This document shows positions 6,026 to 64,000 of a DNA stretch of 64,000 nucleotides, one piece after another. The DNA is from Ophelia neglecta (Eukaryota), in contig OZ260666.1 in NCBI GenBank assembly GCA_965285935.1, positions 36,084,001-36,148,000 of the forward strand, given 5' to 3'. The position numbers were made by a program, and so were the translations under genes. Below the pieces are notes generated by a model, which did no database searches, had not been told where the DNA came from, and saw only the letters and a program-made list of their open reading frames with translations. Every line of letters starts with the position of its first letter. The stretch's first letter is position 1.

Positions 6026-6290
6026 GGGGGGGGGGGGTATTTCCGACCATCGGGATCGGCCTTTTTAGTTATTCGTGAACTGGGAATTTATGGTTAAATT
6101 TCATGTGAATCGGGATTCGACCATTGTCTGTGATTCGGGATCAAGGATTTGTTTTTACTGGAACCCGGGACCGTACTGTTTAATTTCTCGTAACTAGGGT
6201 ATCACTATTTCAATATATTGGGAAGCGGGAAATACCTTATCCCTAATGACATGATGCAGACTTTGAACATCCGTAATACGGGAGTTGCCC
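6026..6290. repeat. Degenerate repeat-element remnant with periodic gtgaNNcggga motifs
   Basis: G-run followed by about 7 spaced copies of a gtgaatcgggat-like motif; no clear second terminus. Confidence 0.4.
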
Positions 6291-7166
6291 ATTTTCCAAA
6301 CTTCAAATTTCATTAGTTACGGTGAATTATTATATATTCATCGCTTTCAAAACAATAAACGTATTTATGAGGAGACCATTGCAAAATGCGAAAACGATAT
6401 GGTCGCCAGACCTATAGGCTTGTATGTACCATAGTATCATAATATCAGACTATAGGCTCATATAGACGTCCATCTAGATGTGGCCATCCGAAGGCAGATC
6501 AGGCCGGTGAATCATGAAAGTATAAGCCCTTACAATCATATTTACGTAAAATAGGCGAAAGTCATATCTGCCCTACGGCATATATGCATATCTACCCGTT
6601 TCACATCTGCCCTTTAGTCACTGACTCGTATCGTCACGGTGATTGGGACCTTTTACAAGTCCACCCCAGGTAATTTTCGATAAACAACTTTAGCATTATT
6701 CTTAATAGTTGGTTGCGGATGTAGCACAATGGTAGAATACCAAACAAGTATCGTGTGGTGTGAAAATGAGATAAATAGCCGCGATTCATGATACTGCGGG
6801 TAATTTTAGTTGTTCCTTGATTATTTCAAGTTAGTTTTTAGCGAGAGAAATAATACCCTGGTGATTCATTGATGGTCTTCTATAGTTATTGAATTGTGGT
6901 CTCATCTGATTGACTCGAAAGCCAGAATGAAACCAAAGTGAAATTGAACCGGAAATGTTGGACGGAGGAATAAATAGGAAGGAATGAAAAGGAAGGATTA
7001 GTTCTAGATCAGCGGAAAGACACCATACATAATAGTGGAATTCAGTGAATTATTTACCCCCAATGATCAGCGCTAAGTTTCCGTCGTAAAATTAGCCGCA
7101 TTTTGCTAAAAAAAAACCCATCAATATCAAACCATAAGGATACCAATATCAACCAAATTCACTCAC

Positions 7167-7500
7167 CTCTTTATATTCGTCTTGTTCACTTGGCAGGTTG
7201 TGATACTTTAAGAAATACTGTTATTTCTTCATTCTCTTGAAACTATGGTCTTTGTGAGTATATCTCCTCTTCGGCCAATTGCATCTGTGCAATATACTGT
7301 TATACCTTCCGTCTCTTGGAACTATAATGTTTGTAAATGTATCTTTCTCCTCCGCACACTTCCTCTGTGTATATCTTGTTTGGAACAACAGTCAACAAAA
7401 AAACAATTTACCAACAGGGGCCATATATTTCAAGCAGTAATATCCTCCTACTGACACCAAGTTCTACTTGAATACATCCGCTAACAACCTCGTCCTGTTC
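7167..7500 (-). other. Possible non-coding 5' exon of the membrane-protein gene
   Basis: Strong donor AG|gtgagt at 7167/7166. The exon at 4373 has an acceptor (tctacag) 2 nt before the ATG, which implies an upstream exon. No frame is open across 7167-7430. The upstream boundary is a guess. Confidence 0.3.
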
Positions 7501-8051
7501 ACGTATGTAGTCATTTGTCGTATATACTTCTAAGCCTTACATTTCCGTGACCAGGGGCTAGTTATAGGGTCAATAGTGAATGAGACCACCGACATTAACT
7601 GACTGGGTTACAACAAGTTACTAACGTTAAAATTAATTATACGATTAAACATTAAAACACATTGATGAAAGCGCGACCCCAGATAGACTTGCAGGTAGCA
7701 ACCAGCACCTCTAAATATATTCAAGGCCAGATCGAGTTCTGTTACATTAACATATATTTAACCAACGATAGCCTAAGGAAATATTTCTGCAATATTCAAA
7801 CATAAATTAAGAAAAAGTGGACGGCCTCGTTCATAAAACATGTACACTGAAGGCTGACGCGGAAAAGAGAAAAAGCCATATGTACGGGTGTACATGTGAT
7901 TAAACCCCTTACTTTACCTCCCCCCCCCCCCCACTAACATCAAGAGTTGCGGCCAATTTGAAGTGACTGTGAGTCCTCATAGAAAGAAATCCGATAGGCG
8001 ATGTGGGGGTATAGCGTCCGTAATTCTTGTACTGCAATATCATTCCACTTA

Positions 8052-9375
8052 TGCTACAGTCACACGGCCATGTTACGGACCAGCGGATGCCTGCATATAT
8101 TTGGATAATGAAAACGCGTTATTTTTACCCCATAATAACGGAAATTTGAGCAAAAGTTACCTATATTCTGCGGACAATACGGATTAGTTGCGTATGTAAC
8201 GTATGACGTTAAACCTGCGGATGAGCCCATCCGCTGCCAACCCGCTGACACATGTCACGGACGACTGCCGGATGACCTACGGATTTACAGATGACTTACA
8301 CCCCAGTCACACAGAGCCATCGGTGATAGATCGCTAGTTGTCTTAGCCAGATTAGGGCGGGAACCGATGCAAACCTATTTACCACCGATATCACCTTTTG
8401 GTCACCTGTTTTCCACCGATCTAATGCGATTGGGTAAAGATGAGTTTCGTCGGGGAAAAACTACCGATTGGGATTTTTAAACGTGTTTAAAATTCTCGAT
8501 CGGTGAAAATATCTAATGCCACTGATGAACTGATACTAACCACCGATGAAAAAAGCTGAGAATAAAACTTGTAATAATTAAAAAAAAAAAGGTTTCACGA
8601 TTATGGGAGATAGGCATTGCAATAGCTCGTCGAACTTTTCCGGAGTCATCCTAATATAGTTCTGGAAGGAGCTGATGTCATCCTCCCTTAGCTCTGCAAG
8701 AATGGTGTGGTACTGCCCAAACTCAAGTATACTATCATCGGTTAACCAAGGTCTGGTCCATCATCACCTTTGCCTCCTATCCTCTTTATCACCTATCTAT
8801 TCCCGATCGGCCAACGATTACCACATATATCTCACCGACCATATCAGACGAAAAATGATTGGTGACTACTGACTTGCTCCCAAACACCGATCGATCGCCG
8901 ACATACCCGATTAAACACCGACTTACAAGCGATGATTACCGGTCATACCAGCAATGATTTTGACCGATTGAACAATTATTCACCACCGATACCCAGTCAC
9001 ACTAAAAGTAAGAAATGAAATCACTTATGACAACCGATGAAAATGAAAAATTATTAGGCCGATTGGGTGCCGATTTAAGCCGACCGTCTGTGTGACTGGG
9101 GCATTACGGAGATATGGGTATACGGATTTTACGTATGGCTAACGTATTTTACGTAAGGCTAACGTATATCCTGCGGATTCTTACGTTTATTTCACCCACA
9201 GCAAAATTTTGAGATTTTCAAAATTCCTGCTGCGGATCTCCGTAGGTCTGCGGATCCTGTGCATTGGGTTACGGATGGATACGGATGCTTACGGATGATG
9301 CGGATGTTTACGGATGTTTACGGATTTTTATCGTAAGCATCCGCAGCATACATAAGTGGCCGTGTGACTGTAGCA
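8052..9375. mobile_element. PIF/Harbinger-type MITE (outer element, about 516 bp once the nested element is removed)
   Basis: TIR tgctacagtcacacggcca / tggccgtgtgactgtagca; TTA TSD at 8049-8051 and 9376-9378; internal tacgga/cggat motifs. Confidence 0.85.
8299..9103. mobile_element. PIF/Harbinger-type MITE nested in the outer MITE
   Basis: TIR (ca)ccccagtcacacaga / tctgtgtgactgggg(ca); TTA TSD at 8296-8298 and 9104-9106; dense accgat/atcggt motifs. Confidence 0.85.
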
Positions 9376-10078
9376 TTAGTGAGCATCTGTGGTTGTGCCA
9401 CTTTAGCTCCGGGCGAATTCAAACGGTATGGTTTATGAATATGATATACCCTCCAAGATGGGGGGGGGGGGGGAGTGACTAGAATAAAAAATACAATTTC
9501 ACACAAAGAAAGTTAACAGTATAACAGTTATATCATAATTTCCTAATATATAGTTAAAGGAAAATTCTAGTGTAAGTATCATTTTTCGAATATATTCTGA
9601 ATTACCTGTTGCCTATATGTACAAGCTATATGCGAGTAAAGAAATACGGCAGGCACGACATTCGCGCCATACATGTACCCTGAAGCAAGTAGTGGCCCAA
9701 ACAGCCATGAAGCTTACTGCCATCGTAAGTTATCTGATATGTCACAGCAAGTAAGGAAGTATAAGATCACGCTCGTTAAAGTTATACACATATGGAAATA
9801 GCTCTTCTTGGAAGTCGCGTAAGAAGCAGGCCAAAAACATTCTCTAGTTTTAATAAGCAATCTACATTTTAATAACAAGTGAGTTATCAAAACGGTGCGA
9901 TATTCGCCCCAATGTATACAGAGATACGCCTATGTGTTGTTGTGGTACACACCACAATTTTGCGTGCCCTTTAATTGTGACTCTGTATTGTAACAGACTC
10001 TGGCTGACTGCCATAAGTTGCGGCCTTCCAGAACCTGGACATATCCCAGGATATCGTGTTCTGCCAGTAACATCCCAA

Positions 10079-10151
10079 TATTCCGAAGGTCCGTTATTCC
10101 GAAGGCCCGATATTCCAAAGCCCGCAATTCCGTAGGTCCGCTATTCCGAAA
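10079..10151. repeat. Short tandem repeat, about 16-bp unit tattccgaaggtccgN, about 4.5 copies (probable transposon subterminal relic)
   Basis: Units directly visible in the sequence. Confidence 0.7.
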
Positions 10152-13100
10152 TTTGTCCGAACTATAACGATAGCTGTTTTAATATTTATAAATAAATTAC
10201 TATTAAGAGTCAAATAGGGAAAATCTATATACAAAGAACAACGAGTTAAATAAAAAATAAAAAATCAATTTCTTGTTTGTTTGTGGTCACTGTATAATTT
10301 TTCATTCAAGCTTTGAATAAGCTCCCGGCCTGGTAATAAATGAGAACAGTTTATATGGGGCTTTTAACGTATCAGAGCCTGCCGCGCCAAAGCCCGTCTT
10401 CAACTGTCCAACATCGCGATGATTCGTCTCGGACAGCCGCGAGCCCCAAGCACCAGAATATCGATACCAGAATACCGAATATTTAACGACATGGTTATAT
10501 GTTGAAGGGTTCGGCTGCCAATCTCAAAAAAGGTCTTAATATCATTTCCATTTATTTCATTTGCTGGCATGTGTTGTGATCTACCATTTTATTTAGCCAC
10601 TTTATTTGGGGTCATCGTCATCGCCTGCGTGTCAGTACTCATACCAAGTTAGGAATAAGGGGGAGCATCAGCTCAGGACTATGGTGTCCTAGGCTCGTGT
10701 CCAAGATGGCTACGCAAACGTCATCAGAGCGAAATGCACGAAATTATTACCTGCCCTAAACAATAGAAATGAATTTTATTTATATAGTGTAAAGTGTATT
10801 TCAACAATTTTTTTTCTTTTTTTTTTTTGCAATCAACAACAATTTGAACCGACCTAACCCCGTTGTGCAACTATCCATTGGAACATTGCCTACTAAATAA
10901 ATTACTAGAAGCACTTAAAAGATCATTCTTCTAGTTTCTTAGCAGGCATCTTGACCACATGACCATGGGTAATGACACCCAGTTATGTGGCTTTCGTATG
11001 ATATATCAAAAACTATACAAGCAAACGAAGTAGGCCTTATAGACGGAAAATACTATTTGGTCACGCACCCCAGACTCAAGAAATCGATAGAGATGCACCA
11101 AATTGACAATTCAAATAGGACCTACCGCCAATCTGTGCTTTTCAAGACACAGGAAAATCGCAGGTGTCATTCTGTCAGGTATTATTAATTAAGAGAATGT
11201 AGTTTATTATTTATACGATACAATTCATGCTTCTTTGTTATTTAGGCGATAGGTATATTATTAATCAGAATGTGGTAATTAATTAAGCAGACCCACTTAT
11301 ATTTAGTTTGCAGTTTACTATTTCATAAATTTCATGGCTACAAACGAACCTCTATTTTGTTTATTTATAAATGTTGTACTGGTATTATGTTTTTCTTGCA
11401 CAAAATTTGGTTAAATATATACAGAAACGCTTAAAGATCGTGCGTTTCTAAGTCTCTGGTCGAATGAATGATTATAACAGTATATATTAACGTTCCTTTG
11501 AATAATTGGTCCAATCATAAATAAAAAAGCTATTTATCAAATTAGATTATTTGTTTTTGATGGGCGTTTGCTTCCTCTCAAGCAACTATCTCGAATTCAC
11601 AAAACAAAAAGTTGAGCTATCTGGTATTCACGAAAGTCAGAATTAATCAAAGATCATCAACTACAAATTGCAGTGACTTTCCATGATCAAGTTTATAATG
11701 GACCTTTTGATCTGCTTTAGTGGATTTCCATAAGCCATTGCTGAAATAAAACCGCGTGTGTTAGAAATGTTTTCAATGAAATTCAGCCGAATTAAGCAAG
11801 CTCTTCTTGGAGCGTAATATTCTTAATCCACGATTTAACTCATGTGTGTTTTGTCTGATGATATCGACTCCCCTTTATTCACTCAATCCTGATTTCAACC
11901 AAACAATAGAAAACGAGAATGTAACATAGGGAGCATAGAAAAAGGAGTGGTTATCTGGTACAAAACAAAATCAGTGATTAAAACCAGTCGAAAGTGGCTT
12001 TGCGTAATCAGCGCAGGTCACAGCGATGGTGAATATGATGACACAACACTGTACAATATATCTATAATTCAAGCCTAATCAAACACGAACCCATTAGCTC
12101 CGGGTTTTCGGCGCTGCTCTGGCGGCGTTACACTGTGAGAAATAGCAAAATAGAATCTCCCTAGCACTGGATCTATCTACATCACCCTCAAACTCTCAGT
12201 GCACGACAGAGAAATAGCGCCAAGCAAACAGCGCAGCGACCCAGAGCCGGAACCAGATAGCCACACATTCATCCCTATTACCTGGAGCCTATTTCTTATT
12301 GAGGATAACTAGGGTTGTGTCGCTGTCGCCATGACATTACCTTACACCGTTTTAACCAACCTGAGATACCGAGCAGGGTTTGCGTTTTCGGGTAAGCAGT
12401 ATCGCCTGGCCGACCGTCTCGAATGCTGAACTTAACTCAAGTAGCTTACTATTACTGCCTCCCGCTAACTTATGGCTGACCGAATATCGCTCTGCAACAG
12501 GAGTAGCATAGTCTATTTATTTAAAGAGTGTACCGGTCTGTATGTTGACTGAAAAGGCTCATCAGATTGTTGAACTACTTAGTCGCAGTGCCGCCCCCTC
12601 TGGCCTCTTTAAGGATAAAATAGTAACTGGGCGATAATTCTTATTAAAGGCAATTTCAGTCAAGTGAAAGCGTTCAAGCATTTAAGGACAGTTACCCTCC
12701 ACCCTACCTCTCACTCCCCCGCCCCCTACCCCCAAAGAATGGTATTTCATCAGGGAAGTGGCTCGGTTTTTAGGTCTTTGTATCCAGATCGAGAATCAGA
12801 GAGCTGCCAATGTCTTCCCCCCCCCCCCTCCCCCCGCCTAAATCCGCTACTGTTTCTCATTTTACCAGAAAGTGGGCCCGGACAAGGGCCTATTTCTGGA
12901 ACTACGCAAGATGGTTTCAGAGGGTTGGTACCGGGGACAATCCAGACATTGGCCTTGTCAACCTTGTAAAATTTACACCCCACCTCTCCTCCTGAAATCC
13001 TGGATTCGCCGCTGAGATGACTAATAAAGAACTCTGATATTTGTGATTTTGGTTTTGATGGTAAAACGAACTTTGCAATCTTCAAAACTTGTTTTTTTCT

Positions 13101-37362: not shown

Positions 37363-38600
37363 TATTCAGCCGTTGCTTAGCTTTTAAGAAAAGCCAGGTT
37401 AACATCCTATAAGTCATTTAATTTTCTACTCAATTAAAGCAACCACAAGAATACACCGACATATCTTGTATGTTTTTACTCTATTATTAGTCCGTTTCAT
37501 TGCTTGTCTCCCCTTAAACTGAGTCTCGCAGCCATGAATTGGGATCGCAATGCATTGTAAATGTTATAGATAATGACGTTTATTTCACTCATGTCTTAGC
37601 ATGAGATGATAAAACAGCTATAAAGACCCGTCAATATCAGCAGTCTTTTTCCGACAGTGTATCCATTAGGTCGGTTACATTCCTAATAGATAACATTCAC
37701 TGGTGAAAAAAATCAAGGAAAACGATGAATACTTTATACTTCAAATGGCCCGGTGAAACAATTATAGCCAAGTTACACTCTGCCGAATGTAAATTTTTAA
37801 TAGTATACATTAGTCTACTTAAAATAGTAGTTTAAACTCTTTTGTATATCTCAGTAAGGAATCGAAATTTTTGATCTAAATGATCTAAATAACTATGTTT
37901 AGGATATAAAAACTGTTTTAAAATACCTAAGTTATTTGCCCGGCCAAGTACGTGTATTGTATAAACGCTGAACAGCCCTTTGCTGTATTTTAAGTTATCA
38001 TGTTAAAGCTGCACCTCGACAGTCTACCCCAAAACCAATTCGTTACACCGCAAGAAGGTCACAACTACTTGACGAAAGCCGTAACTACCTGTCCTACTTC
38101 ATAAACGCCCGTCACAGTTTCTACAGTCCTCCAATATCAAATCTGTCCAAAACTGATGCTCTCAGTGGGATACAACAAAACCCGGGCATCCTTTTTAATG
38201 ACATTAAAGAGGCACCATTCAAAAGGAAACGACTCTTTCAGTAAATGTATTGTGCGGAAGGACTTTCAACTGTCACTGACAGTATGATCGGTGACACTAG
38301 ATGCGAATTAATGAAATAAACGAACGACCATATTTATTACACCAAGCTCCGATAGCACCATTCATAACAGAAGAATATAATAAGTGAAGTTAATTTCAGC
38401 AAAAAAGTAACAAGAAACGTAGAGTTGTGATTATATTTCATTTCGCACAGTAAACCATTTCACATGTATGTAGCTAAGATATCAATTACAAGGCCTAATG
38501 TACAAGTGTTTCTAGGTCCATGGAATTTGTTTTGATTGCTTTGTATCCTTAGTTCTAGTTTCATATTTTGGAAAAAAGCACTCATCAGTAAACAAAAATT

Positions 38601-39079
38601 GCCCCCCCCCTCGAGGCAGGTTGGTAGTGGCAACATCCCTCCACCTCCCCTCCCGAGTGACAGGCAGGGTGGTAGTAGTAACACCCCTCCACCACCCCTC
38701 CCGAGGGGCAGGCAGGAAGGTAGTGTTAACACCCCTTCACCTCCCCCCCCCCAAGGGGCAGGCAAGGTGGTAGTGGTAACATCCCTCCACCTCCCCTGCC
38801 GAGGGACAGGCAGGGTGATAGTGGTAACACCCCACCTCCCCTTCGGAGGGGCAGGCAGGGTGGTAGTGGTAACACCCCTCCACCTCCCCTCCCGAGGGGC
38901 AGGCAGGGTGGTGCTGTTAACACACCTCAGGGTGGCAGTGGTACCGCCCTCCCCCCCCCCCTCCCCCCGATGTGCAGGCAGGAAAATAGTGGTAATAACC
39001 CCCCTCCCGGAAGAACAGGGTGGTATAGGTAACACCCCCCTCCCCTCGAAGGGCATGTTTTAGTAGTAACACCCCACCT
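38601..39079. repeat. GC-rich minisatellite, about 47-48-bp unit, about 10 copies
   Basis: Unit aggcagggtggtagtggtaacacccctccacctcccctcccgaggggc repeated head to tail with no unique spacers. Confidence 0.92.
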
Positions 39080-47934: not shown

Positions 47935-50612
47935 TCACAAACTGCAAACATACGCTTTCCTGCTCCTGTACACTCAGTCGATCACGGCCAAATCTACAAA
48001 GAGAACAAATAAAGTTATCCTATTATTAATTTATTTCACAGGCAGCCAATGGAGGGCTTTCAACACTGGTGAAATTTGTTCGCCCCGTCCCGTGCGAGTA
48101 ATAACTCTGGCGGCGAGACAGCAAGGTTTTGGGAAGGGCCACAAGTAAGCCATTACTGTAGTCAAGTTTGGCAATGACTGTGGACTGGATGAGAGTTTTG
48201 CAGGCATCAGTGGTAAGATAGTTCCTGATCTTGCTGATGCTGTGTAACTGAGCATAGCATGACTTGATAATGGCTCCTACATGTCTTCCATACTGAGTGT
48301 GCTGTCAAGGTAACTGCCAAGATTCTTCACTGAGGCACTAGGCTGATTGCAGCACTGCCAATTGAAAGGGACAAATTGGAATGAGCTGACAGGCGGTGCC
48401 TAGGTGAGTAAAAGATGAGTTCAGATTTCTCTCCGTTCAACTTCAAAAGATTGAAACTCATCCACTTATACACACATCGCTGACACAATGTTGGAGCTTT
48501 GTTGACACGTTGCCCCAATTGGAGAGATTTTTTTCGTCAACAACTAAACTAACTAACACATTTGAAAACTAAAAACATACATTTTGGGAGGCATTTTCAA
48601 TTATTTGCATGACATATCATCAGTATCTGCATTCTAAAAGAAAAATTGCCTTATCATGACATAATACATATATAATTTTTTTAATATACTCAGCATCAAC
48701 AACACATATTATCATCTCTGTTCATTTAAGCATATGAGGATATGAAATATAAACAATTCAAAACTTCTCACTTGCAAATCCGGCAAAGAATGCCCCTACG
48801 TCGAAGGCAGTTGGAATACATCGACCATATTCCCAATCGATAAATTTTACACGACCTGAAAATAACATATTTACTACAGGCCTGTAAAACTTCGCAAAAC
48901 TTACCGACGCTTCACTATACAAAGATAGGACCACGCATTTTATTTCAACAGGAATTATGTAATAATGCCATGAATTACCACCCTTAGATTTGTCGTAAAT
49001 CATATTTTGAGGGTTAGGGTCAAGATGACAGATACTAGTCGAAGAACATTGTATAGCACAGCTATTTCCTGAAGATCTCTGGCCTCTTTCTCTAGGCACC
49101 TTTTGTCCATTACCTCATTTATGAGTCTGGTTAATAATGAAATCAACTAAATAAATCAACCGCTGGGGCTGAATGCTTTTTTTTTGAAGTCACTCGTGAC
49201 AAACTGCTTTGTGTTGGAAACATGGCAACTTTAAAAAATAATATAATACATGTATATGAATTTCTATGTCTTATATCCTCGAATTATGTATTATTGTGTA
49301 CCTGGCATTTTTCATCGCATCAGTAAGCTTGTCTGGGAGGTTGCTTAGGAACAAATTGATATACCCATCTGTCGTACTCTTGGGCGTCAAAAATTCAACC
49401 TTCACCTATTTCCTCTAGGACTTTATTCCAATTATTTGTACTGGCCTTTAATCTTGCCATTTCTTTGGCAGCACACCTTTGTAACGAATAATGTGAACTT
49501 TGAAGTGAACATATCCATTATAGTGAAAAAATTACATGTATTTCTAAAAGTAAAATGAATGATTAAGTTTGAATTATGAATGAAGAAATAAAGCAAACCT
49601 TGCTAAATGTTCAAATGTTCCGATAGCGTCTTGATACAGACAAATTCCGGGGATGTATCTATAAGCCATGCCTTTAGTAAACCTACAGTATACCGGCTCT
49701 CCACAACCCACGTGATGGAGAACCCTCATCATCAGGATCTCGTTGTCTCGGTCAACAAAGGAAGAGTCCTTTCCGTAAATTTTCACAAGCACCATATCTT
49801 CTTCATTTTCGTCGTCTATTAACCGACACCCAACAAGTTTGTTCATTAACCCGCCATGTAATTCCTACAATGAAAACAGTGTATAATCTTTTTTTTCATA
49901 CTATTCGTCCTCATGTGAATGGATTTTCTTTATTTTTTAAACACAAATGGTTTGTTGACATTCTTAACAATGTCAAGCATTTAATCTTAGTCTGATTTGC
50001 AAAATAATCATAGGCAGTATTAGCAATAATCCAGCGTCAATTTATATGGCAATGGTTTTATTTAATCTTGCGTTTTTACATGCGTGTCAACTAATATTAA
50101 TAATATTTTCACATGTCACGTGTACTTCTCTCTCGTCAAACAGCGGCTGATGAGCTTCAATGTGTTTAATTTGTGGAAAGACGAATTAATTTTCCGCCAA
50201 ACAAATAAACATGGGCCATATTTCCATTTAAATACGAGAATATAAGAGAATGATTTTAAACATTATGCTACAGGGTTTGGTTGATATATAAAGGCACTGC
50301 CAGTAGAATGACTCCTAATTTGAGATTCTGCCTGCGAGTCTTTACGCTAAATCCGTGTCACTGTCCTCAACCCCCGTCCCCTAGGTGGATCGGGGGGGGG
50401 GGGGGCATCAGTACACAGCCACTGTGATAACAGTGTGTGAATGGTACTAATGCAAGTAATGGTGACAATAGTACCATAGAAAACATTATGTTTCTTTTAC
50501 GCTAAAGAGCAGGTCTTCGGGAGTCCATGATGGCCTGACAACCTCCAGTATAGGCAGCACGTCCTTCTCATAACTCTCTAACTACCAAATCCAATATGGC
50601 TGTGGCCGCCAT
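47935..50612 (-). pseudogene. Ethanolamine kinase-like pseudogene (copy C)
   Basis: Exon 1 50501-50612 (5-nt deletion, TGA); exon 2 49599-49864; exon 3 49302-49476 (11-nt deletion, TGA); exon 4 48979-49126 (1-nt deletion); exon 5 48772-48855; start of exon 6 about 48530-48552; exon 8 47935-47993 (2-nt deletion). The rest of exon 6 and all of exon 7 are replaced by a LINE fragment. Confidence 0.9.
48031..48525 (-). mobile_element. Degenerate L2/CR1-group LINE fragment (C-terminal part of the RT ORF)
   Basis: Frameshifted motifs WMSFNLLKLNGEKSELI, VKNLGSYLDSTLSM and ARVITRTGRGEQISPVLKALHWLPV are typical of L2-clade ORF2. Confidence 0.85.
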
Positions 50613-53439: not shown

Positions 53440-56244
53440 TCACAGGCTGAGAACATAAGCTTTCCTTTTCTTGTATGCACCGAGTAAATCACGAACAAAT
53501 CTAGATGGAAAATAGAACAAATAAAGTTACAATGGGAAATTTATATATTTATATAATATTTATAACTATATATGGGCAAGATCGATGTTGTATAACAGTT
53601 GCAAAACAAAGTGTACGAACCCAATAAAATCAAAATCAATTGGGGATTTTTCAGCTTGTCCTAGTGCCCACAAAGCCGAAGAGAACATGAAAAACTGATA
53701 AATAAAATAAGAAATTATATTAATTCTTTTAATTTGCAAACCCAGAGAAAAAAAGAAAAAGATTTTACTTATTATTTGACTATATTAACACAACCGCCAT
53801 AGTTTACTATACAAATGTTTACCAATGCCATTTTGTTCTCTTCAATATACAATTCTTCTATTTCCGTTTGGGTAATTGCTGTTGCGTCTTTACCCTCGAA
53901 TTCATATTTGTACTCCAGAAACCAGCGAATCCATTTAAGTTGGTATTCTCTACTTGGGTACTTGCTTTCGTCAACAGCGAAACCAACTAACAAATTTAAA
54001 AACTATTAAAGTTTAAGAAAATATATACAATAAGGGGGAGGGGGCAGGGGCATTTTGAGAAATGCCCTTTATACATGAAAAAGCTTTATAAGTCACTTAA
54101 ACATGAAAAAGGACTTTATTTTGATATAGGAAATAGCTTCAGTATCTGTCTTACCTATTTACTTATTTATTCAGCTTCAACAATACATATTATTTGATCT
54201 CTTCTTTAAGGTCTATGTAGTATAAACTATACAATACTTCTCACTTGAAAATCCGGCGAAGAAAGCTCCAATGTCGAAGGAAGTTGGAAAAAACCGACCA
54301 TATTCCCAATCGATGAATTTTACACGATCTGAAAATAAATAATTGAATATTTGCATACATCAATTAGACACAACCTACACCGACGCTACAGAACATAAAA
54401 TGTATGACCTTTTATTATTTATATTCCAATATAGGCCTATTCTGTGTAATAATGCTACCCATTACCATTGGCTTTGTCGTAAATCATATTTTGAGGAACA
54501 GGGTCCATATGAGAGATACTAGTCGAAGAAGTTTGGATGGCATCCGCTAGTTCATGTAGTTCTCTGACCTCGTTCTCAAAGCTCCCTTTGTCCATTACCT
54601 CACTTACTAGTCTGATCAGTCAAAAATATGGAAAGAATATTATCCAGTGGGCCGTTTACTTAATAAAATAACCACTGTAGCTGAATGTTCTTTTGAAGGC
54701 AATCAAGGTTGCATGTTGCAAACCTGATTCATCATATTTTTATGCATTTACATTACATATTTTCTCAAATTATCTATTTTCACATTGCGGTGTACCTGAA
54801 ATTTTTCACCTCATCAGTTAGATTTTCCAGTAGGTTGCCATCGAACACACTTGCATAGCCTTCTGTCGTATTTTTGGGTGTCATGAACTGTTTTGCCCTG
54901 TCGCCTTCGCCTATTTCTTCTACGACTTTATTCCAATCATTTGAGCTGGCTTTTAATCTTGCCATTTCTTTGGCAACACACCTTTGTAACAGATAATGCC
55001 AATTAGAAAGCCAAAACAGTGTTTTATAGGAAGGACAACCAATTCATTCAGTAAAATTAACATGTTTGAATGAAATATGCCAATAGCATGATTGAAGAAA
55101 CAAAGCACACCTTGCTAAATGTTCATCGCCGATGGTGTCCTGATCCAGACAAATTCCGGGGTTGTATCTATAAGCCATGCCATTAGTAAACCTACAGTAT
55201 ACCGGCTCTCCACAACCCACGTGATGGAGAACCCTCATCATCAGGATCTCGTTGTCTCGGTCAACAAAGGAAGAGTCCTTTCCGTAAATTTTCATGAGCA
55301 CCATATCTTCTTCCTTTTCGTCGTCTTCCAACCGACATCCAAACAGTTTGTTCATTAACCCGCCATGCAATTCCTGTGATGAAAAGGTTTATTATGTCTA
55401 TTGTTCATATTGTGGATGTGAATTGGTTTTCTAAGTTTTTAACAGTTTTTGCCATCCTTCCCAAAGTGAAGCCTTTTTTTTCGTCGACTTTGCAACAGTG
55501 TCATTAGCCTTCATAGCATTAATCAAGAGTCAACGAGACACATGAGTGCAAAGCCCCTTTGCAATCCCGAGATAAAGTCATGGGCATAGGCCAAAAGTTG
55601 TAGCAGTTTTGTATCTCATCATTAAGTTGCTTGTCACAATCCAAAGAACACTATATGTGAAATACTGAGGGCAAAAGGTAATAGTGTCTGTAGAACAGTC
55701 ATTGGGTTAAATGTATTGACAAGTGTTATGTTTTGTTATGAGAATTTTGTAAATCTGGAGGTTAGCTTTGAACGCCAAAGCTGCAGTGACTTTCATAGCG
55801 TACATAGCATATTGAGGTCTGCTACTTCCGTTTCCGTTTCTTTAACTATCTCCATCCCTCCTCCCCCCCCCCACCCCACCCCACCCCACCCCTTCCCCTT
55901 CGGACACGAAACTTATATCTCTGCTATGCTTCGCTTCGCGGGATTACTAACGTTACATGGGTTTATATTAAAACACCCATGAGTTACACTAGAAGATCAA
56001 ATATCATAGCTGCAGCATTGGCAGTGTCGTATGCCTTAAGAGGCACATATTGCACATCTACGTACGAAGTGTACGCAAGCACGTAAAGTTGTCACCATTT
56101 CAAAAGAAAATAGTATGTTTCGTTTACCCTGAAGTGCAGATCTTTTGGAGCCCATGATGGTCTAACAACTTCCAGTATAGGCTGCACGTCCTTCTCAAAA
56201 CAATCTTCTCTAACTATCACATCCAACACGGCAAAGGTGGCCAT
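53440..56244 (-). CDS. ETNK1: Ethanolamine kinase-like protein (choline/ethanolamine kinase family), copy B, 364 aa, intact; divergent paralog
   Basis: Exons 56128-56244, 55111-55373, 54796-54981, 54466-54611, 54245-54328, 53823-53986, 53621-53694, 53440-53500 = 1095 nt with an open frame. Motifs GGLMNKL, VLMKIYG, VDRDNE, F.NGMAY, SHMDPVPQNMIY (Brenner), FIDWEY, YPSREYQLKW, LWALGQ. The symbol indicates the family, not orthology. Confidence 0.92.
55524..55950. mobile_element. Probable repeat-element insertion in intron 1 of copy B
   Basis: Homology with intron 1 of copy A stops after tagccttcatagcattaat and resumes near 56000; intron 1 is about 340 bp longer in B. Family not determined and boundaries approximate. 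Confidence 0.4.
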
Positions 56245-56413
56245 ACTGATTATGCCGGTTCGATCTAAATTTAGTATGCCTATTGTGAATAGTAGCTGCA
56301 ACACATCAAGGAAGCGATCATTATTAATTCCATACATTTGACTAGATGGAGTCACCGGTGTTTTTCAACTGCACATTATTCTCGATAGGGATTCGATGAA
56401 GTCTTCCTACTTA

Positions 56414-56716
56414 GGGTTCGAGCATTTGATAATGTAGGGGGGAGGGGGGAGAGAGAATTTTTTTTCAAAACATTTTTTTGCCTCCTCCAAAACTATCTTT
56501 TTCTTTCCTCATAATTCCCCTGCAAACATTTTTTTTCTTTTAGGTCTTTTATAATAATTTTTAGCCATTTGGTGTATTTTTTCGCAATGTGCAAGACAAA
56601 CATTTTTTTTCTTAAATAGTGTGACAAACTTTTTTTTGGCCAGAGCTGGCCAACAAACTTTTTTTCTAAATTTTTCTCATCCCCCCCCCCCCCTACATTA
56701 TCAAATGGGCGGCCCC
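56414..56716. mobile_element. Harbinger-type MITE upstream of copy B
   Basis: TIR core catttgataatgtagggggg / cccccctacattatcaaatg; TTA TSD at 56411-56413 and 56717-56719; T-rich interior; absent at the homologous site upstream of copy C (about 50810). Confidence 0.82.
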
Positions 56717-58047
56717 TTAATATTATCTTGTCGTTTGGTATAGCTTCATTTAAAACCTGCTCAAGCTGAACTGTCAGAGATCACGACTCTAAATAAACAA
56801 ATGGTGATCCTTAAATATAACGAGATGACTTTGCAATTGTGCAGTTGCTATTATGCTCTTGACACACTTTTACAGCATTTGAGCGGTTATCACGTGATGC
56901 AAATCGTTAACTTTGCAATTGAATCTAGGTTTCCGCATGCGATGACCAAAGATTCATAGAATTTTCTCTTTATTTCGATCCCCCATTAGAATTGTGATAA
57001 GTTTCTCCAGACGGTGCGATGGTTAATATCATAAATATGTCAGCAAAAAATAAGCTCTGATAACCAAAGATGGCCCTTTTTATCAGTTAGTCCAATTTGT
57101 GCCATTACAATAAAAACACGGCTTGTTATGTGCCTAGCTACACAGCGACTCTATTACCAGCGTATTGTGCTCGGACGTTTTTATTGCCTGTGAACTTCAA
57201 TCAGGTCTTTCATAAAACTTTTCAACAAAATGATTTTTGTTTCACATGAATCGTGAAAAGGGTTCCTTTATTACCATGACCTGGGTTCCCAATGACTCCC
57301 CTCCTTAAAAGGTACTAAGTTACATGCAATTATACCCTTTACAATTCATACTGTTTCTAAATATGTGTCAGGAGGACTATTTAAACAAACACAAAACATG
57401 GAAACTAGTCGCAATGAATATAAATCCTGTGCTATTGATTATGTGAGTGATATATGAGTGCCCATGCAGTTAATGTCACATTTAACCCCATCATCTTGGC
57501 AGGCTTCATTATTTAAAGATGGGCTAAGGGACGAAGCAATAGATACAAGGGGGGGGGGAGGGGGCTTTGAGGAAAACAAAACATCGATAAACCATCATTC
57601 CAATAACTACATTCACAACTAAAAGAATGTAAATGAAAGGTTTCGTATTTCGGTCGAGTGTATCAAACACGGATCTTGATCCGAAGTATATTGACGTGGC
57701 AAATTTATTATTCGGTTGGTCAGCATTTTATTGGCTTTCCGTTTCCGTTGAGAATGAAGATTTATGGATAGTGAAGGCAAGTCCCATGTTTATACAAATG
57801 CTTATCGATTTGCCCGCAGCCAGTTATCAAGACAAATAAAACCTAAGTATAGTATTAACTGTAAAAAGTGTCTATATTTTACACAAAGAATACAGTTTTG
57901 GCCATTTTGGGCGAAAATTGCTGTGAGCTTAACGGAAACTCTGTTGAAAAAGTTTTTAGTTATGTACATGGTAAATTAATGAAAACACAGCAGCTTTAAC
58001 CTTTAAGATAATTTCTAGTTATAAGATTATCGAATATCCATTTATGT

Positions 58048-60501
58048 TCACAGGCTGAGAACATACGTTTTCCTGTTCTTGTACGCACGTAATAAATCAC
58101 GAAAAAATCTAGATGAAGAACAGAACAAAGTAAGTCATAAAACGGCAATTATCAATTTTAATTGCGCTATTTTTATAACTATAAATGGGCAAGATAGATG
58201 GAGTATAAACAGTTGCAAAAAACGTACGAACCCAATAAAATCATAATCAATTGAGGATTTTTCAGCTTGTCCTAGTGCCCACAAAGCCGAAGAGAAAATG
58301 AAGAACTGGAAGATAAAATTGATTAACATACTAGGTCGTCGAGGCGAACCCAAAGGAAAAATATTCCAGTTATTATTTGACTATGTTAACACAACCGCCA
58401 CAGTATACTATACAAATGCTTACCAATGCCATTATGTTCTCTTCAATATACAATTCTTCTATTTCCTTTTTGGTAATTGCTGTTGCGTCTTTTCCCTCGA
58501 ATTCATACTTGTACTCCAGAAACCAGCGAATCCATTTTAGTTGATATTCTCTACTTGGGTACTTGCTTTCGTCAACAGCGAATCCAACTAACACATTGAA
58601 AAACCAATAAAGCATAAGAAAATATATATATTAGTGGTGATGGGGGGGGGGGGGCATTTTGAATGAATTGCATGTAATTATTATCTGCTTTATACATGAA
58701 AAATGACTTGATTTTGAAATAAGAAATAGCGTCAGTAATTGTTTTACCCATTTACTCGGCCTCAATAGTACTAATTATTTTATATATTCATTAAGGTCTA
58801 TGTAGTATTATCCATCCAATAACTTCTCACTTGCAAATCCGGCGAAGAAAGCTCCTATGTCGAAGGAAATTGGAAAAAATCCACCAAATTCCCAATCGAT
58901 GAATGTCACACGATCTGGAATTAAAATAATAAATATTCACACAGAAAAAACCTTGCACAACGCATACCAAAGCTACAGTACATAAAAGGTAAGACCTTTT
59001 AATATTTAAATTACAATATGTTCTGTGTAATAATGCTATCCATTACCATTGGCTTTGTCGTAAATCATATTTTGAGGAACAAGGTCCATATGAGAGATAC
59101 TAGTCGAAGAAGTTTGAAAGGCATCCGCTATTTCCTGTAATTCGCTGACCTCTTTCTCAAAGCCCTCTTTGTCCATAACCTCACTTTCTAGTCTGATCAG
59201 TCAAATAGAAAGAAAGCATATTACGAACAATCCAGGGGTCAGTTTACTAGATAAAATAACCGCTTTAGCTGAATGCTTTTTCGAATGCTCTCCTGACGAA
59301 ATGCTCATGTTGGAAACCTGACTAATTTTAGAATGGCATGTTTGTGCATTTACATTTTTCACATTATCAAATTCCCATTACTGTGTACCTGGCTTTTCTC
59401 ATCTCATTAGTAAATTTTTCTAGAAGGTTTCCTCCGAACAAACTTGGATAGCCTTCTGTCGTATTTTTGGGTGTCATGAACTGTTTTGCCATGTCTCCTT
59501 CGCCTATTTCTTCTAGGACTTTATTCCAATCATTTGAGCTGGCTTTTAACCTTGCCATTTCTTTGGCAACACACCTTTGTAACAGATAATACCATTTAGA
59601 AGTCAAAATAGTGTTTTATAGGGAGGAAAATGATTCATTCACTAATATTAGCAATTCAGTTTGAATGAAATATGCCAATAGTATGATTGAAGAAACAAAG
59701 CACACCTGGCTAAATGTTCATCGCCGATGGTGCCCTGATCCAGACAAATTCCGGGGTTGTATCTGTAAGCCATACCATTAGTAATTCTACAGTAGACCGG
59801 CTCTCCACAACCCACGTGATGGAGAACCCTCATCGTCAGGATCTCGTTGTCTCGGTCAACAAAGGAAGAGTCCTTTCCGTAAATTTTCATGAGCACCATA
59901 TCGTTTTCCTTTTCGTCATCTTTTAACCGACATCCAACCAGTTTGTTCATTAACCCGCCATGTAATTCCTATAGTAATATTTTTTTTCTTATAATATATA
60001 CTGTGCAAGGTATGATTGCTCATGTGAATTGTTTTTTTGACTTCTTAAGTTTCTTGCCATCCTTCCCGATGTGAAGCCTTTTATTCGTTGAATTAGCAAC
60101 TGCATTACTATAGCCTTCACAGCTTTAATTCACAGTATATTGTTTTGAAAGTAGGGTGTCTTTTATCATGCGTTTATGTTTTAAAATAATGTATAAAGTT
60201 GTCCATTTACCGCCTGGAACCCCATCTATGGGACCATGCGATACATCAGGATATCAAATATTATACCTGTAGCATATAAGCACTGTGTTATGCCTTATAA
60301 GAGACAAAAATTGCACCGCTATCTCTCAAAACTATGTACGTAAAGATGACAACATATCAATAGAAAACAGTATGTTTCGTTTACCCTGAAGTGCAGATCT
60401 TTTGGAGTCCATGCGGGCCTGATAACATCCAGTATAAGCTGCACGTCCTTCTCATAACACTCCTCCCTAACTATTACATCCAATGTGGACAAGGCGGCCA
60501 T
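58048..60501 (-). CDS. ETNK1: Ethanolamine kinase-like protein, copy A, 364 aa, intact; divergent paralog
   Basis: Exons 60385-60501, 59706-59968, 59389-59574, 59047-59192, 58831-58914, 58424-58587, 58232-58305, 58048-58108. Same exon sizes as copy B, open frame, motifs SHMDLVPQNMIY and FIDWEF. The symbol indicates the family, not orthology. Confidence 0.92.
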
Positions 60502-60704: not shown

Positions 60705-62402
60705 TTTCCCAGTCATTGAATTTTACACGATGTAGAATTTGGCAATAGATTTGCTACAATTTTTTGTATAAAACATTAAATTTAATGATCAAATGTTTTT
60801 CTGGTTACCATTGGCTTTAGGGTAAATAAAGTTTTGAGTAACAGGGACAAGATTAAATGGCTCTCCACATCCCAAGTGGTGGGGAACCCTCATTATCAGG
60901 ATTTCGATGTCTTTCCGTACATTTTTATGAACACCTTATCATTTTCCTGTTCGAAATTTTTGTACCTGACATTGAACCATATTATTCATCAGACCGACCT
61001 GCAATACCCATGATGCAAAATATATCAATTTACAAAGCAACAAAAGGCATGTATTGAGTATTTATAGGGGGATCCTAGTATAGAAATCTTAGATTATCTT
61101 GTTATAACCGGTTTGAAATCACACATGTAGTCCCGGGTTACGAAAAAGTCCCTGGTGGCAAAGAGCATATACAATAATTCCTATATATTGAAATGTATCC
61201 CCCGTAAGCAATAATTGTAATTAAAGGTAACGTTTCTGCTAACACAGGTGAGAAGGAATTGTTTCCACTACAGCTGACCACAGTATACTTGTTTGTACTG
61301 GGACTAGCATGTTATCTCAGCAATTTTTTGTTTGTGGCCCCGTAGGAGGGCGCTGGGGTGCTTATCTTAATCATACCAATGCATAATGACAAGCCGTTCA
61401 GCAGGTAAGTGATCCAAAACACCAGTTTTACAGCGGCCTTATTAAACAACATTCCGTAACATATGTAAGAATCCGAATAAAAAACATTGACAGTGAACCA
61501 GCTCGCGGACACATTTAGACACACTCTGGCTTGTTGATGTTGTTGTTGTTGTTGTTTTGGGCTTTACGTGGCTTTCAACACTTATGGTCATATCGCCACG
61601 GGGCCTATTTATATGAAAGGGGGCTAATGCCCTCTTTAGAGTGCTGGAGTATACCTGTAGTAGACACTAGACAGGGAACCCCATCCAATCACATTAAACT
61701 GACACCGGGTTGACCAGTCCTGATACTACCCCAGAAATACCGGGCGCCTGGCAGGGGAGCTAACCGTACCTATTTTTACGTCTTGGGTTTGACGCTATCG
61801 GGATTTGATCCCCGATCTACCACTTGCGAGTTGGACACCCTAACCACTCGGCCAAGCTTTGGTGGTCACTCTGGCTTGAAGCACACACTATATGTGTGGT
61901 CCGGTAAATAAACAACATGTAAACTTTACAAAACTGTTCGTGTCTGGCAGGTTACATGTGCTCTCAGAACACAGGTGGTGTAGGCTGGGTCAAAGAGTTG
62001 ATCTTATCCAGACAATGGACATACCAAGTTACTACAGTTCAGGCCTACAGACAACATGGCTGAATAAGAATTTGATTGTTTATGTTCAAAGACATTGACT
62101 AGGCCTTGGTAGGGTGTTCCATCATCGGGTCCACCTATAAATATATTTAAAAACCTTAAAGACAATATAGTAACAGATCGGCAAGGCTTGATATCATTGC
62201 TACTGACAAAATCCACGCGGTCGCTAGTGCTCTCATTGAATGATGTATGCACTAACAATTGAAAGCAGATGAGTTGGAATATGTGAACCCTGGCAGGCAC
62301 GTCCTTTGTAGGCCTAGATGGTCTCATAATAAGTATATGAAGCACGTCCGTTTCATAACACTCCTTTTAAACTACTCCATCTCACATCGCTATGGCGGCT
62401 AT
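60705..62402 (-). pseudogene. Heavily degraded ethanolamine kinase-like pseudogene (copy D)
   Basis: Exon 1 relic 62289-62402 (ATG>ATA, in-frame stops, ECYETDV retained). Exon 2 relic about 60858-61005 is joined directly to the 3' end of exon 4 (about 60805-60850). Start of exon 5 at about 60705-60731. Confidence 0.8.
61534..61866 (-). mobile_element. Full-length tRNA-derived SINE (core resembles the Meta-SINE domain)
   Basis: Minus strand: A box TGGCCGAGTGG, B-box-like GATCAAATCC, core gtcaaacccaagacgtaaaaataggtac, (CAA)n tail. 12-bp TSD cactctggcttg at 61522-61533 and 61867-61878. Family assignment from memory. Confidence 0.88.
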
Positions 62403-62649: not shown

Positions 62650-64000
62650 ATTTGATTTGATTTGATTTCTTTATTCCTCCTTACTAGGAGAGTTACAAAT
62701 GAACAAAATTAATACGTTACTATGTACAATAATTCACACATGCCATAAAACAAAAGACAATTAAATTAAAGTATATTGGTGTACATTCGACACCGTTTGT
62801 ACAAACCATTTATCACATATCACATATTGAAGGACCATCACACTCAATTTGTACCTAAACTACTGCCAATGTCTTATGCACTGACAAGCTTGTTCTTATG
62901 AGCTTGGTATAAACTATAAATCTGAGAGGCGGCAGCGCTGGCCGACTCCCCATCTCCCGCCAGGAGCCATTGCATAATGTCTGGGAAGGACCTGGTGTGG
63001 CTAGGGATCAACCCGCGAATACCACTCCTGTCCACCTCCAACACAGGACACACTAACAGGAAATGCTTTGCATCTTCGACTTCAGAGCGACATAGTCTAC
63101 AGAGCCTTGCACCCCGTGGGATGTTCTCATATCGTCCCCTTGTCACTTCCAGATCCGAGTCCTCCAAAACCAGTTTCACCATGACTCGACACGCTGATAG
63201 CGCCGCGGGAAATTTCAAAGACAATTTCCACCATCTGCTCATTTCCAATGAACCCCCTATCTTCCAAAAGGTCTTTGCGCCAGGAAACACAAGGCAGGCT
63301 GCTCCGAGGTGTTGTCCCGTAGCGTAGGCAATGGCTTGTTTCACTTGCCGTTTCCACTGCACTTTGGAGGGGATAAATGGAGTCGTGTAGCAGCAGATGG
63401 GACAGCCGATCATCGATGAAATCGGACCCGAACTGGATGGTTTAGCTTGTCCCAAATCGTCTTCTATTACCCTGTATGTAACCATGGTTCGTAATTGGGA
63501 ACCAGGAGCGGCGCTCAACACACTATGTAGCAAGATTAACCGTAGGTAATCCAGCTCACACTCCAGTGACCACCATCCTAGTGTAGCATAGCTTAGCGGC
63601 CCAGCTATGTTTTCGGAGATATGCTGAAACCGTTTCCCGGCCTGTTTGTGAGCTCTCTCCAATCTATCAGTGTCGACCGAGCGAAGTTTAACCAGCTCAA
63701 GTCCGTACAGAAGACCAGGGGTCTACACTAACTTTTCTCAGCACTTGCCCTAAGGCCAAGTAGCACCAGGAAACTACTTGCCCGCACCACAGTATTACAG
63801 TCCCAAATATATTTCTACCTATAAAACATACAAGTTAACCAACATTTGGGGAATTTTAGCAGGTTGCCCGGCGGGAAGTTAGTAACTAAAATCTTTGTGC
63901 CCGCAAGCAGATTTGAGGTGCCCCGGGACGTCGGGCAATAGTTAGTGTAGACCCCTGAAGACTCGGCATGACAATACTCTTGTAAAGTTTACTGGCCACC
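62650..64000 (-). mobile_element. LINE 3' portion (RTE-X-like, C-terminal CCHC knuckle), continues beyond right edge
   Basis: ORF ending at 62874 with GRYENIPRGARLCRLCRSEVEDAKHFLLVCP. After removing the MITE, the upstream frame reads KLYKSIVMPSLLYGLEL. AATAAA at 62670-62675 and (ATCAA)n tail at 62650-62668. Confidence 0.85.
63716..63957. mobile_element. 242-bp MITE with perfect 18-bp TIR and 5-bp TSD, inserted in the LINE ORF
   Basis: TIR caggggtctacactaact at both ends; aagac duplicated at 63711-63715 and 63958-63962. Confidence 0.9.

What the first reader, a model, noticed from the sequence alone, without database searches (positions are those of the whole stretch)
53440..60501. Ethanolamine-kinase paralogs with intact catalytic core but rebuilt substrate pocket: candidate kinase for a new substrate
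Seen: both intact copies keep the Brenner-motif H, D and N (SHMDLVPQN / SHMDPVPQN) and the metal-binding IDWE. Established (recalled family consensus): animal ETNK/CK read CHNDL, IDYEYxxxNxxxYDIGNHFxE and ASHFFWGLW, and the Glu and first Trp (CHKA E349, W420) line the amine pocket. Here HND is HMD, the motif Asn is Phe, NHFxE is AFFAG, and SHFFWGLW is F(I/M)FSSALW. Pseudogene C shares AFFAG and has HLD, so the changes predate the duplications. Inference: loss of the acidic residue and part of the aromatic cage suggests a larger, uncharged or hydrophobic acceptor (lipid, steroid-like or xenobiotic, by analogy with EcKinase-type relatives) rather than ethanolamine.
Basis: partly seen in the sequence, partly recalled or inferred. 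Interest (0 to 1): 0.78.

Follow-up and report, generated by a model that had tools for sequence, protein, structure and literature searches.

The report
Divergent ethanolamine-kinase paralogs, altered substrate pocket
Two neighbouring, intact and selectively maintained genes are offshoots of the ordinary ethanolamine kinase that keep the phosphate-transfer machinery but have replaced most residues that hold the amine substrate, so they probably phosphorylate something else; the same genome holds dozens of similar genes, so this locus is one example of a large, unstudied expansion.

Summary
Copies A (56244-53440) and B (60501-58048), both on the minus strand, are intact 8-exon, 364-residue genes of the choline/ethanolamine kinase family (PF01633). 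They are 85% identical, all their introns are GT-AG, and dN/dS is 0.37.

They belong to a clade of five intact genes on this chromosome (A, B, D, E, F), plus pseudogene C and an exon relic. Pairwise dN/dS within the clade is 0.10-0.37.

All catalytic residues are kept. Eight conserved positions are changed in all five genes: P-loop Thr/Ser to Met, β3 Arg to Lys, and N305, N337, N345, H346, E349 and W420 in CHKA numbering. W423, F435 and Y440 stay aromatic.

A fully canonical ETNK with the same exon plan, and a canonical choline kinase, lie elsewhere on the chromosome.

- A changed acceptor is plausible, but it is inferred from sequence alone. No RNA data exist and no assay was possible.
- The locus is not unique. 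The genome has at least about 50 ETNK-like copies in several arrays, each with its own altered pocket.
- 28 of 141 nearest public relatives, annotated "ethanolamine kinase 1-like", show the same pattern.

No close relative of this clade exists in public protein libraries.

The parts
53440..56244 (-). Gene A, ETNK-like kinase of 364 aa in 8 exons: 56244-56128, 55373-55111, 54981-54796, 54611-54466, 54328-54245, 53986-53823, 53694-53621, 53500-53440 (stop included)
   Evidence: Model built. All introns are GT-AG and the ORF is intact. Exon 2 matches PF01633 at 57 bits.
58048..60501 (-). Gene B, ETNK-like kinase of 364 aa in 8 exons: 60501-60385, 59968-59706, 59574-59389, 59192-59047, 58914-58831, 58587-58424, 58305-58232, 58108-58048 (stop included)
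   Evidence: Model built. All introns are GT-AG. Exon 2 matches PF01633 at 40 bits. B is 85% identical to A with dN/dS 0.37.
54466..54611 (-). A exon 4: Brenner phosphotransfer motif SISHMDPVPQN. H, D and the last N are kept; the motif's first Asn is Met.
54245..54328 (-). A exon 5: choline-kinase motif FIDWEYGRFFPTSFDIGAFFAGFS. D330 and E332 are kept. N337 is Phe, N345-H346 are Ala-Phe, E349 is Gly.
   Evidence: The exon length of 84 nt is identical to that of the canonical ETNK exon.
53621..53694 (-). A exon 7: FFMFSSALWALGQAEKSPIDFDFIG. W420 is Ser; W423, Q427 and F435 are kept.
   Evidence: The exon length of 74 nt is identical to that of the canonical ETNK exon.
59047..59192 (-). B exon 4: Brenner motif SISHMDLVPQN
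58831..58914 (-). B exon 5: FIDWEFGGFFPISFDIGAFFAGFA
58232..58305 (-). B exon 7: FFIFSSALWALGQAEKSSIDYDFIG
47935..50612 (-). Pseudogene C of the same clade. It has frameshifting deletions in exons 1, 3, 4 and 8 and a lost exon-4 acceptor. Exon 6 is reduced to about 20 nt and exon 7 is absent. It keeps CHLDPNPQN and DVGAFFAGFA.
60858..61004 (-). Relic of an exon-2-like segment with two in-frame stops, about 350 bp upstream of B's start codon

Best explanation
A and B are functional, cytosolic, ATP-dependent small-molecule kinases. They descend by DNA-level duplication from the animal ethanolamine kinase gene.

Shown:
- The genes are intact and have the same exon plan as the canonical ETNK of this genome.
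- They are under purifying selection.
- They keep every residue needed for phosphoryl transfer: the P-loop Gly and Asn, a basic β3 residue, the αC Glu, the Brenner His/Asp/Asn and the Mg-binding Asp-x-Glu.
- They have replaced the conserved residues that in choline and ethanolamine kinases hold the substrate's hydroxyl and charged amine. These are the P-loop Ser/Thr, the motif Asn, Asn-His, the terminal Glu and the first Trp. The replacements are Met, Phe/Tyr, Ala/Gly-Phe, Gly (Arg in F) and a small residue.

Inferred: the Asp of H-x-D still deprotonates an acceptor hydroxyl, but the acceptor is no longer ethanolamine or choline. An uncharged or more hydrophobic alcohol would fit a wider pocket that lacks the acidic residue. 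The clade is one specificity class within a very large lineage-specific expansion of ETNK-like kinases.
For: - Gene models and intact ORFs for A, B, D, E and F.
- Exons are about 91% identical between A and B, against 81-83% for six of the seven introns (for exons, for introns).
- dN/dS is 0.37 for A-B (bootstrap interval 0.24-0.57) and 0.10-0.26 for the other pairs in the clade.
- PF01633 match.
- A canonical ETNK (C9:51.21 Mb) has the same exon lengths and phases and fully canonical motifs. A canonical CHK lies at C9:46.80 Mb.
- Site table against 141 relatives: catalytic positions kept, eight conserved positions changed in all five clade members.
- Roles of those residues from the literature. 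In LicA the terminal Glu of the choline-kinase motif makes the charge-charge contact with the amine. The P-loop Thr (Ser121 in human CKα2) contacts the substrate hydroxyl or phosphate, and T29A leaves about 10% activity. LicA also has Lys where human CKα2 has Arg146, so Lys is compatible with catalysis (PMC4364537).
- The CHKα1 pocket residues are Tyr333, Tyr354, Tyr440, Trp420, Trp423 and Phe435 (PMC4814829).
- Tree: (A,B,D,F,E) is supported at 99*, with L001 as sister at 96*. The group sits inside the ETNK radiation and apart from the genome's canonical ETNK.
Against: - There is no expression evidence. No RNA run exists for this organism, and the only holders are DNA contigs.
- There is no structure or docking of the joined protein and no assay.
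- Half of the aromatic box (Y333, W423, F435, Y440 equivalents) is retained, so a cationic head group is not excluded.
- Residue-to-function transfer comes from choline kinases (LicA, CHKα). No ethanolamine-kinase complex with ligand was consulted.
- dN/dS of 0.37 between A and B is relaxed compared with the older pairs.
Confidence: 0.5

Rival explanations
1. A and B are still ethanolamine (or choline) kinases. They would be redundant or tissue-specific isoforms whose pocket drifted but still binds the small amino alcohol through the retained Tyr/Phe333, Trp423, Phe/Tyr435 and Phe440 and the catalytic Asp.
For: - Their closest named relatives are all ethanolamine kinases.
- The exon plan is the same as that of ETNK.
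- Four aromatic pocket positions and all catalytic residues are kept.
Against: - Six positions conserved at 74-85% in the family, plus the P-loop Ser/Thr, are changed together. They stay changed in five paralogs under purifying selection.
- The terminal Glu that pairs with the amine, and the P-loop hydroxyl residue whose Ala mutant loses about 90% activity in LicA, are both gone (PMC4364537).
- A canonical ETNK and a canonical CHK are already present in the genome.
Confidence: 0.2
2. The copies are non-catalytic (ATP-binding pseudoenzymes or regulators) or are recent duplicates drifting towards pseudogenes, as copy C and the exon relic already have.
For: - The array shows birth and death: pseudogene C and the relic.
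- A-B dN/dS of 0.37 is higher than for the older pairs.
- There is no expression evidence.
Against: - All catalytic residues are retained in five genes that have diverged to dS of about 1-2.5 with dN/dS 0.10-0.26. This is unexpected if catalysis were dispensable.
- The ORFs and all splice sites are intact.
- Exons are more conserved than introns.
Confidence: 0.1
3. The kinases act on a different but still cationic amino alcohol or related amine, bulkier or differently substituted than ethanolamine. The retained aromatic residues would supply cation-pi binding without the acidic residue.
For: - Y333, W423, F435 and Y440 equivalents are retained, and new aromatic residues (Phe/Tyr at 337, Phe at 346) are added.
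- Cation-pi contacts dominate head-group binding in CHKα1 (PMC4814829).
Against: - The acidic rim residue is lost (Gly; Arg in paralog F).
- The Trp that stacks on the cationic head in CHKα1 (W420) is replaced by Ser, Ala or Gly.
Confidence: 0.15

Closest known systems
Animal ethanolamine kinase (ETNK1/ETNK2, Drosophila eas; Pfam PF01633)
   Same: - Same fold family: PF01633 match.
- Same 8-exon plan, with exon lengths and phases identical to the genome's own canonical ETNK for exons 5-7.
- The best named public relatives are ETNKs from Porites, Anopheles, Ptychodera and fish, at 29-34% identity.
- All catalytic residues are present.
- The YPS/D-x-x-x-Q-L-K-W-I/L-R segment is shared with the canonical ETNK.
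   Different: - Only 34-36% identical to the canonical ETNK of the same genome.
- Not its ortholog (tree).
- The Brenner Asn, motif Asn, Asn-His, terminal Glu, first Trp and P-loop Thr are replaced.
- Present as a tandem clade of five intact genes rather than one or two genes.
Choline kinases with solved substrate complexes (human CHKα/β, S. pneumoniae LicA)
   Same: - Same motif register. The sister gene L001 aligns to human CHKβ chains 3feg and 2ig7, and IDWEF...DLAIYFVG pairs with [21 protein letters not shown].
- The catalytic Asp, Asn and Asp-x-Glu are shared.
- Lys at the β3 position, as in LicA Lys45.
   Different: - Lacks the terminal Glu that pairs with the quaternary amine.
- Lacks the first pocket Trp and the P-loop Ser/Thr.
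- Lacks the long α7-α8 hairpin with Tyr354 that is typical of eukaryotic choline kinases, as ETNKs do.
Uncharacterised 'ethanolamine kinase 1-like' paralogs of other invertebrates (for example Lineus longissimus XP_064621284, Paramacrobiotus XP_055350516 and XP_055348903, Ptychodera flava XP_070545797)
   Same: Same family and the same pattern of intact catalytic residues with three or more of six pocket positions changed. This is seen in 28 of 141 library relatives.
   Different: - None falls in the window clade among the 75 relatives placed in the tree, and every relative found is at most about 34% identical.
- Their pocket replacements are different residues.
- None has a known function.
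Insect ecdysteroid-kinase-like (EcKL, PF02958) and other expanded small-molecule kinase families
   Same: Working analogy only: a large, tandemly arrayed, lineage-specific expansion of a kinase-fold enzyme with a conserved phosphotransfer core and a variable acceptor pocket.
   Different: A different Pfam family. The window exons give no EcKL match. The sister gene L001 scores 22 bits on EcKL against 137 bits on Choline_kinase.

Membership tests
Choline/ethanolamine kinase family (Pfam PF01633) | Significant match to the family profile | tested here: met
   Searched exon by exon. Exon 2 scores 40 bits (B) and 57 bits (A) against a cut-off of 29. Exons 4, 5 and 6 give sub-threshold matches at the collinear profile positions 142-180, 180-209 and 218-267. 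The sister gene L001 scores 137 bits.
Choline/ethanolamine kinase family (Pfam PF01633) | Catalytic set: P-loop G..N, basic β3 residue, αC Glu, Brenner His/Asp/Asn, Mg-binding D-x-E | tested here: met
   All are present in A, B, D, E and F. The β3 residue is Lys instead of Arg, as in LicA.
Choline/ethanolamine kinase family (Pfam PF01633) | Strict Brenner motif (C/S)HNDhX3N as written in PMC4364537 | tested here: not met
   A and B read SHMD(P/L)VPQN. The Asn after His is Met (Leu in C, D and F; Ala in E). It is Asn in 85% of 141 relatives.
Choline/ethanolamine kinase family (Pfam PF01633) | [quoted passage not shown] | tested here: not met
   A reads VKFIDWEYGRFFPTSFDIGAFFAG. The motif Asn is Phe and the terminal Glu is Gly. 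The other specified positions are met.
Choline/ethanolamine kinase family (Pfam PF01633) | Phosphorylates ethanolamine or choline | not testable with these tools
   Needs an enzyme assay.
Orthologs of animal ETNK1/2 (the housekeeping Kennedy-pathway enzyme) | Is the genome's ETNK ortholog and groups with canonical ETNKs | tested here: not met
   A separate, fully canonical ETNK gene lies at C9:51,208,391-51.214 Mb. The window clade forms its own long-stemmed branch (99*) with L001.
Ecdysteroid kinase-like (PF02958) | Match to the EcKL profile better than to other kinase-fold families | tested here: not met
   No EcKL match for the window exons. L001 scores 22 bits on EcKL against 137 bits on Choline_kinase.

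The most novel reading that the evidence does not exclude
The roughly 50 or more ETNK-like genes of this (probably annelid) genome, including the A-F clade, form a phosphorylation-based system for neutral or hydrophobic small molecules such as xenobiotics, dietary or signalling metabolites. It would have arisen from ethanolamine kinase independently of, and analogous to, the insect EcKL detoxification kinases. Each array, with its own pocket signature, would handle a different class of acceptor.
Probability: 0.25. Interest if true: 0.7.

Novelty: new variant of a known kind. Interest (0 to 1): 0.45.

Why it matters
As far as I know (from memory, not searched here), no PF01633 member has a demonstrated acceptor other than choline, ethanolamine or close analogues. 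A selectively maintained clade lacks the amine-binding Glu, one cage Trp and the hydroxyl-contacting P-loop residue but keeps all catalytic residues. That makes it a concrete, cloneable test case for a new acceptor specificity in this fold. It matters more as a class than as a locus. The same genome carries dozens of such genes with different pocket signatures, and comparable "ETNK1-like" proteins are scattered through invertebrate proteomes without any functional study. If they prove to be metabolite or xenobiotic kinases, this would add a second animal example, besides the insect EcKLs, of detoxification or signalling by phosphorylation.

Tried and rejected
- First model with a 137-nt exon 4 (361 aa). 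Rejected in favour of the acceptor 9 nt upstream, which is conserved in D, E and F and gives 364 aa.
- Profile query made of L001 plus separate exon rows. MAFFT stretched the fragments, so the alignment was unusable and was not submitted.
- Word-index search with L001 found nothing.
- Word-index search with the 108-aa exon-2 ORF of A found nothing.
- RNA evidence: no RNA run holds the stretch. The three holders are genomic DNA contigs of one sample, cover the introns and show no intron-skipping joints.
- Identifying the organism through cluster names of the best hits did not work. The hits were unnamed Logan or ENA entries or came from distant phyla.
Only their 3-kb loci could be read.
- Literature search for a described PF01633 expansion found none.
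- Those tools saw single exons by reference. The joined models were used only inside local scripts, for alignment, a local BLAST against proteins already fetched, the tree and dN/dS. Structure prediction and superposition on CHKA complexes were therefore left out.
Full report
**What is there.** The window is G000:C9:36084001-36148000 of a 762-Mb animal genome. Earlier, unchecked notes of this scan call it annelid-like; I did not test that. On the minus strand lies a tandem array of choline/ethanolamine-kinase genes:
- B, 60501-58048.
- A, 56244-53440.
- A degraded copy C, 50612-47935.
- An exon-2 relic with two stops, 61004-60858.

Pfam PF01633 matches exon 2 of B at 40 bits and of A at 57 bits, against a cut-off of 29. 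Exons 4, 5 and 6 give collinear sub-threshold matches.

**Gene models.** Both A and B have 8 exons, every intron is GT-AG, and the ORF is 1095 nt, giving 364 aa.
- My first model used an exon-4 acceptor that gave 361 aa.
- C is a pseudogene. It has 5-, 11-, 1- and 2-bp deletions and a lost exon-4 acceptor, exon 6 is reduced to about 20 nt, and exon 7 is missing.

**The clade.** Three more intact members lie on the same chromosome: D (C9:36.158-36.161 Mb, 364 aa), E (36.237-36.240 Mb, 363 aa) and F (35.33 Mb, opposite strand, 363 aa). All have 8 exons and open frames.
- A and B are 85% identical. The clade goes down to 53%.
- Nei-Gojobori dN/dS is 0.37 for A-B (bootstrap interval 0.24-0.57) and 0.10-0.26 for the other pairs.
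- A-B exons are about 91% identical, against 81-83% for six of the seven introns (for exons, for introns).
- The genes are, or until recently were, under purifying selection.

**Canonical genes elsewhere.** At C9:51.21 Mb the genome has a fully canonical ETNK of 373 aa. It reads FSHNDLLLKN, IDFEYGAYNYYPYEIANHFCEYAG and GHLFWGLWGLVQ.
- Its exon phases match the window genes. Exons 5, 6 and 7 have exactly the same lengths (84, 164, 74 nt).
- This fixes the register of the motif comparison without gaps.
- A canonical choline kinase (FCHNDLQEG, IDFEYASYN) lies at C9:46.80 Mb.
- A and B are therefore extra, ETNK-derived paralogs made by DNA-level duplication.

**Residue comparison.** I aligned the clade with the canonical ETNK and 141 public relatives found by a full HMMER search seeded with the intronless sister gene L001. 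CHKA numbers are by motif arithmetic from residues named in PMC4364537 and PMC4814829.

Kept in all five clade genes:
- P-loop Gly and Asn, and the αC Glu.
- H304, D306, N311, D330 and E332.
- W423 and Q427.
- Aromatic residues at 333 and 440; position 435 is Phe or Tyr in A, B, D and E and Ile in F.

Changed in all five:
- P-loop Thr/Ser (CHKA S121) to Met.
- β3 Arg to Lys, as in LicA Lys45.
- N305 to Met, Leu or Ala.
- N337 to Phe or Tyr.
- N345 to Ala or Gly.
- H346 to Phe.
- E349 to Gly (Arg in F).
- W420 to Ser, Ala or Gly.

N305, N337, N345, H346, E349 and W420 are 74-85% conserved among the relatives. The P-loop position is Thr or Ser in about 80%.

What the literature says about these residues:
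- In LicA the terminal Glu of the choline-kinase motif makes the charge-charge contact with the amine.
- The P-loop Thr (Ser121 in hCKα2) contacts the substrate hydroxyl or phosphate, and T29A retains about 10% activity (PMC4364537).
- In CHKα1 the head group sits among Tyr333, Tyr354, Tyr440, Trp420, Trp423 and Phe435 (PMC4814829).

The pocket is only partly rebuilt.

**Relations.** In a maximum-likelihood tree of 82 proteins, (A,B,D,F,E) is a 99* clade on a long stem with L001 as sister (96*). It sits inside the ETNK radiation and apart from the genome's canonical ETNK. None of the 75 public proteins falls inside the clade.
- The best public relatives are 29-34% identical. Where named, they are ethanolamine kinases of corals, mosquitoes, a hemichordate and fish.
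- Word-index searches found nothing closer.
- This genome's own proteins are evidently not in the libraries either, so the absence of close relatives reflects sampling as well as divergence.

**Context that lowers the singularity.** The genome holds at least 72 PF01633 exon matches. About 52 of them are N-terminal-exon matches, so the count is roughly 50 or more copies including pseudogenes. They lie in arrays on C9, C5, C7 and C12, plus the intronless L001 on C1.

In the loci I could read, other subfamilies also keep H-x-D-x4-N and D-x-E but have their own altered pocket:
- SH(G/C)DWRNEN with IDLEFSGMTFETYDLAFYFAIGSK on C5.
- THMDVNRAN with IDFEYCGFNYYLWDLAYYMVLG at C9:51.76 Mb.

Among the 141 public relatives, 28 keep the five catalytic residues but change three or more of the six pocket positions. 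They include "ethanolamine kinase 1-like" proteins of a nemertean and a tardigrade.

**Interpretation.** The best-supported reading is that A and B are active kinases with a changed acceptor (confidence 0.5). The direction of change is loss of the acidic and polar residues, gain of Phe/Ala/Gly, and a small residue in place of Trp420. This fits a wider, less polar pocket.

This remains inference:
- No RNA data exist.
- They were used only in local scripts.

Rivals are retained ethanolamine or choline activity (0.2), another cationic amino alcohol (0.15) and loss of catalysis or decay (0.1).

**Verdict.** This is a real, well-defined, selectively maintained divergent ETNK clade. It is a new variant of a known enzyme family and one instance of a large unstudied expansion. 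It deserves moderate interest, and the interest attaches more to the whole class than to this locus.

Noticed in passing
G000 genome-wide (table); loci L002-L050: There are at least 72 PF01633 exon matches, about 52 of them N-terminal exons. They lie in arrays on C9 (7.7-9.9, 20.5-20.9, 35.3-36.24, 39.95, 40.26, 51.75-51.79 Mb), C5 (47.4, 56.98, 60.34-60.39, 101.6 Mb), C7 and C12. This is a very large expansion of a family that normally has 2-4 genes. Subfamilies differ in their pocket residues.
   Followed up: partly
L001:1408-2502 (- strand) = G000:C1:118.66 Mb: An intronless 364-aa ETNK-like ORF reading CHNDPKHSN and IDWEFAALGYPEHDLAIYFVGK. It is sister to the window clade in the tree. In exon 2 it is closest (45-49%) to the C9 9.9 and 20.9 Mb arrays. 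It is probably an intact retrocopy.
   Followed up: partly
window 56302-56901: A high-copy repeat just upstream of gene A. Summed contig depth in the DNA runs reaches 1,000-12,000, against about 10-25 in the flanks, and many contig joints and loose ends fall here.
   Followed up: no
L032:7838-7975 (-) and L033:1-84 (-) = C9:46.8008 and 46.8030 Mb: The canonical choline-kinase gene has two nearby alternative versions of the exon that carries the I-D-(Y/F)-E-Y-A-S-Y-N motif. This may be a tandem exon duplication or mutually exclusive exons.
   Followed up: no
window 55328, 55370, 56170, 56203, 56238, 58538, 58544: Single-base differences in the DNA contigs of the same sample fall inside exons of A and B. 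Three are synonymous and four are conservative replacements (E55K, L41M, D14E, T3A). None makes a stop. They are alleles or near-identical paralog contigs.
   Followed up: partly
window 1767-2693 (-): A 308-aa ORF rich in hydrophobic helices with no Pfam match. It may be a single-exon membrane protein or part of one.
   Followed up: no
window 38460-39063 (both strands): Overlapping 175-198-aa ORFs on both strands made of Gly/Pro/Thr-rich repeats. This is a low-complexity repeat rather than an evident gene.
   Followed up: no
window 62874-63662 (-): A 262-aa ORF with a Cys-rich tail and no Pfam match. It may be derived from a mobile element. Not tested.
   Followed up: no
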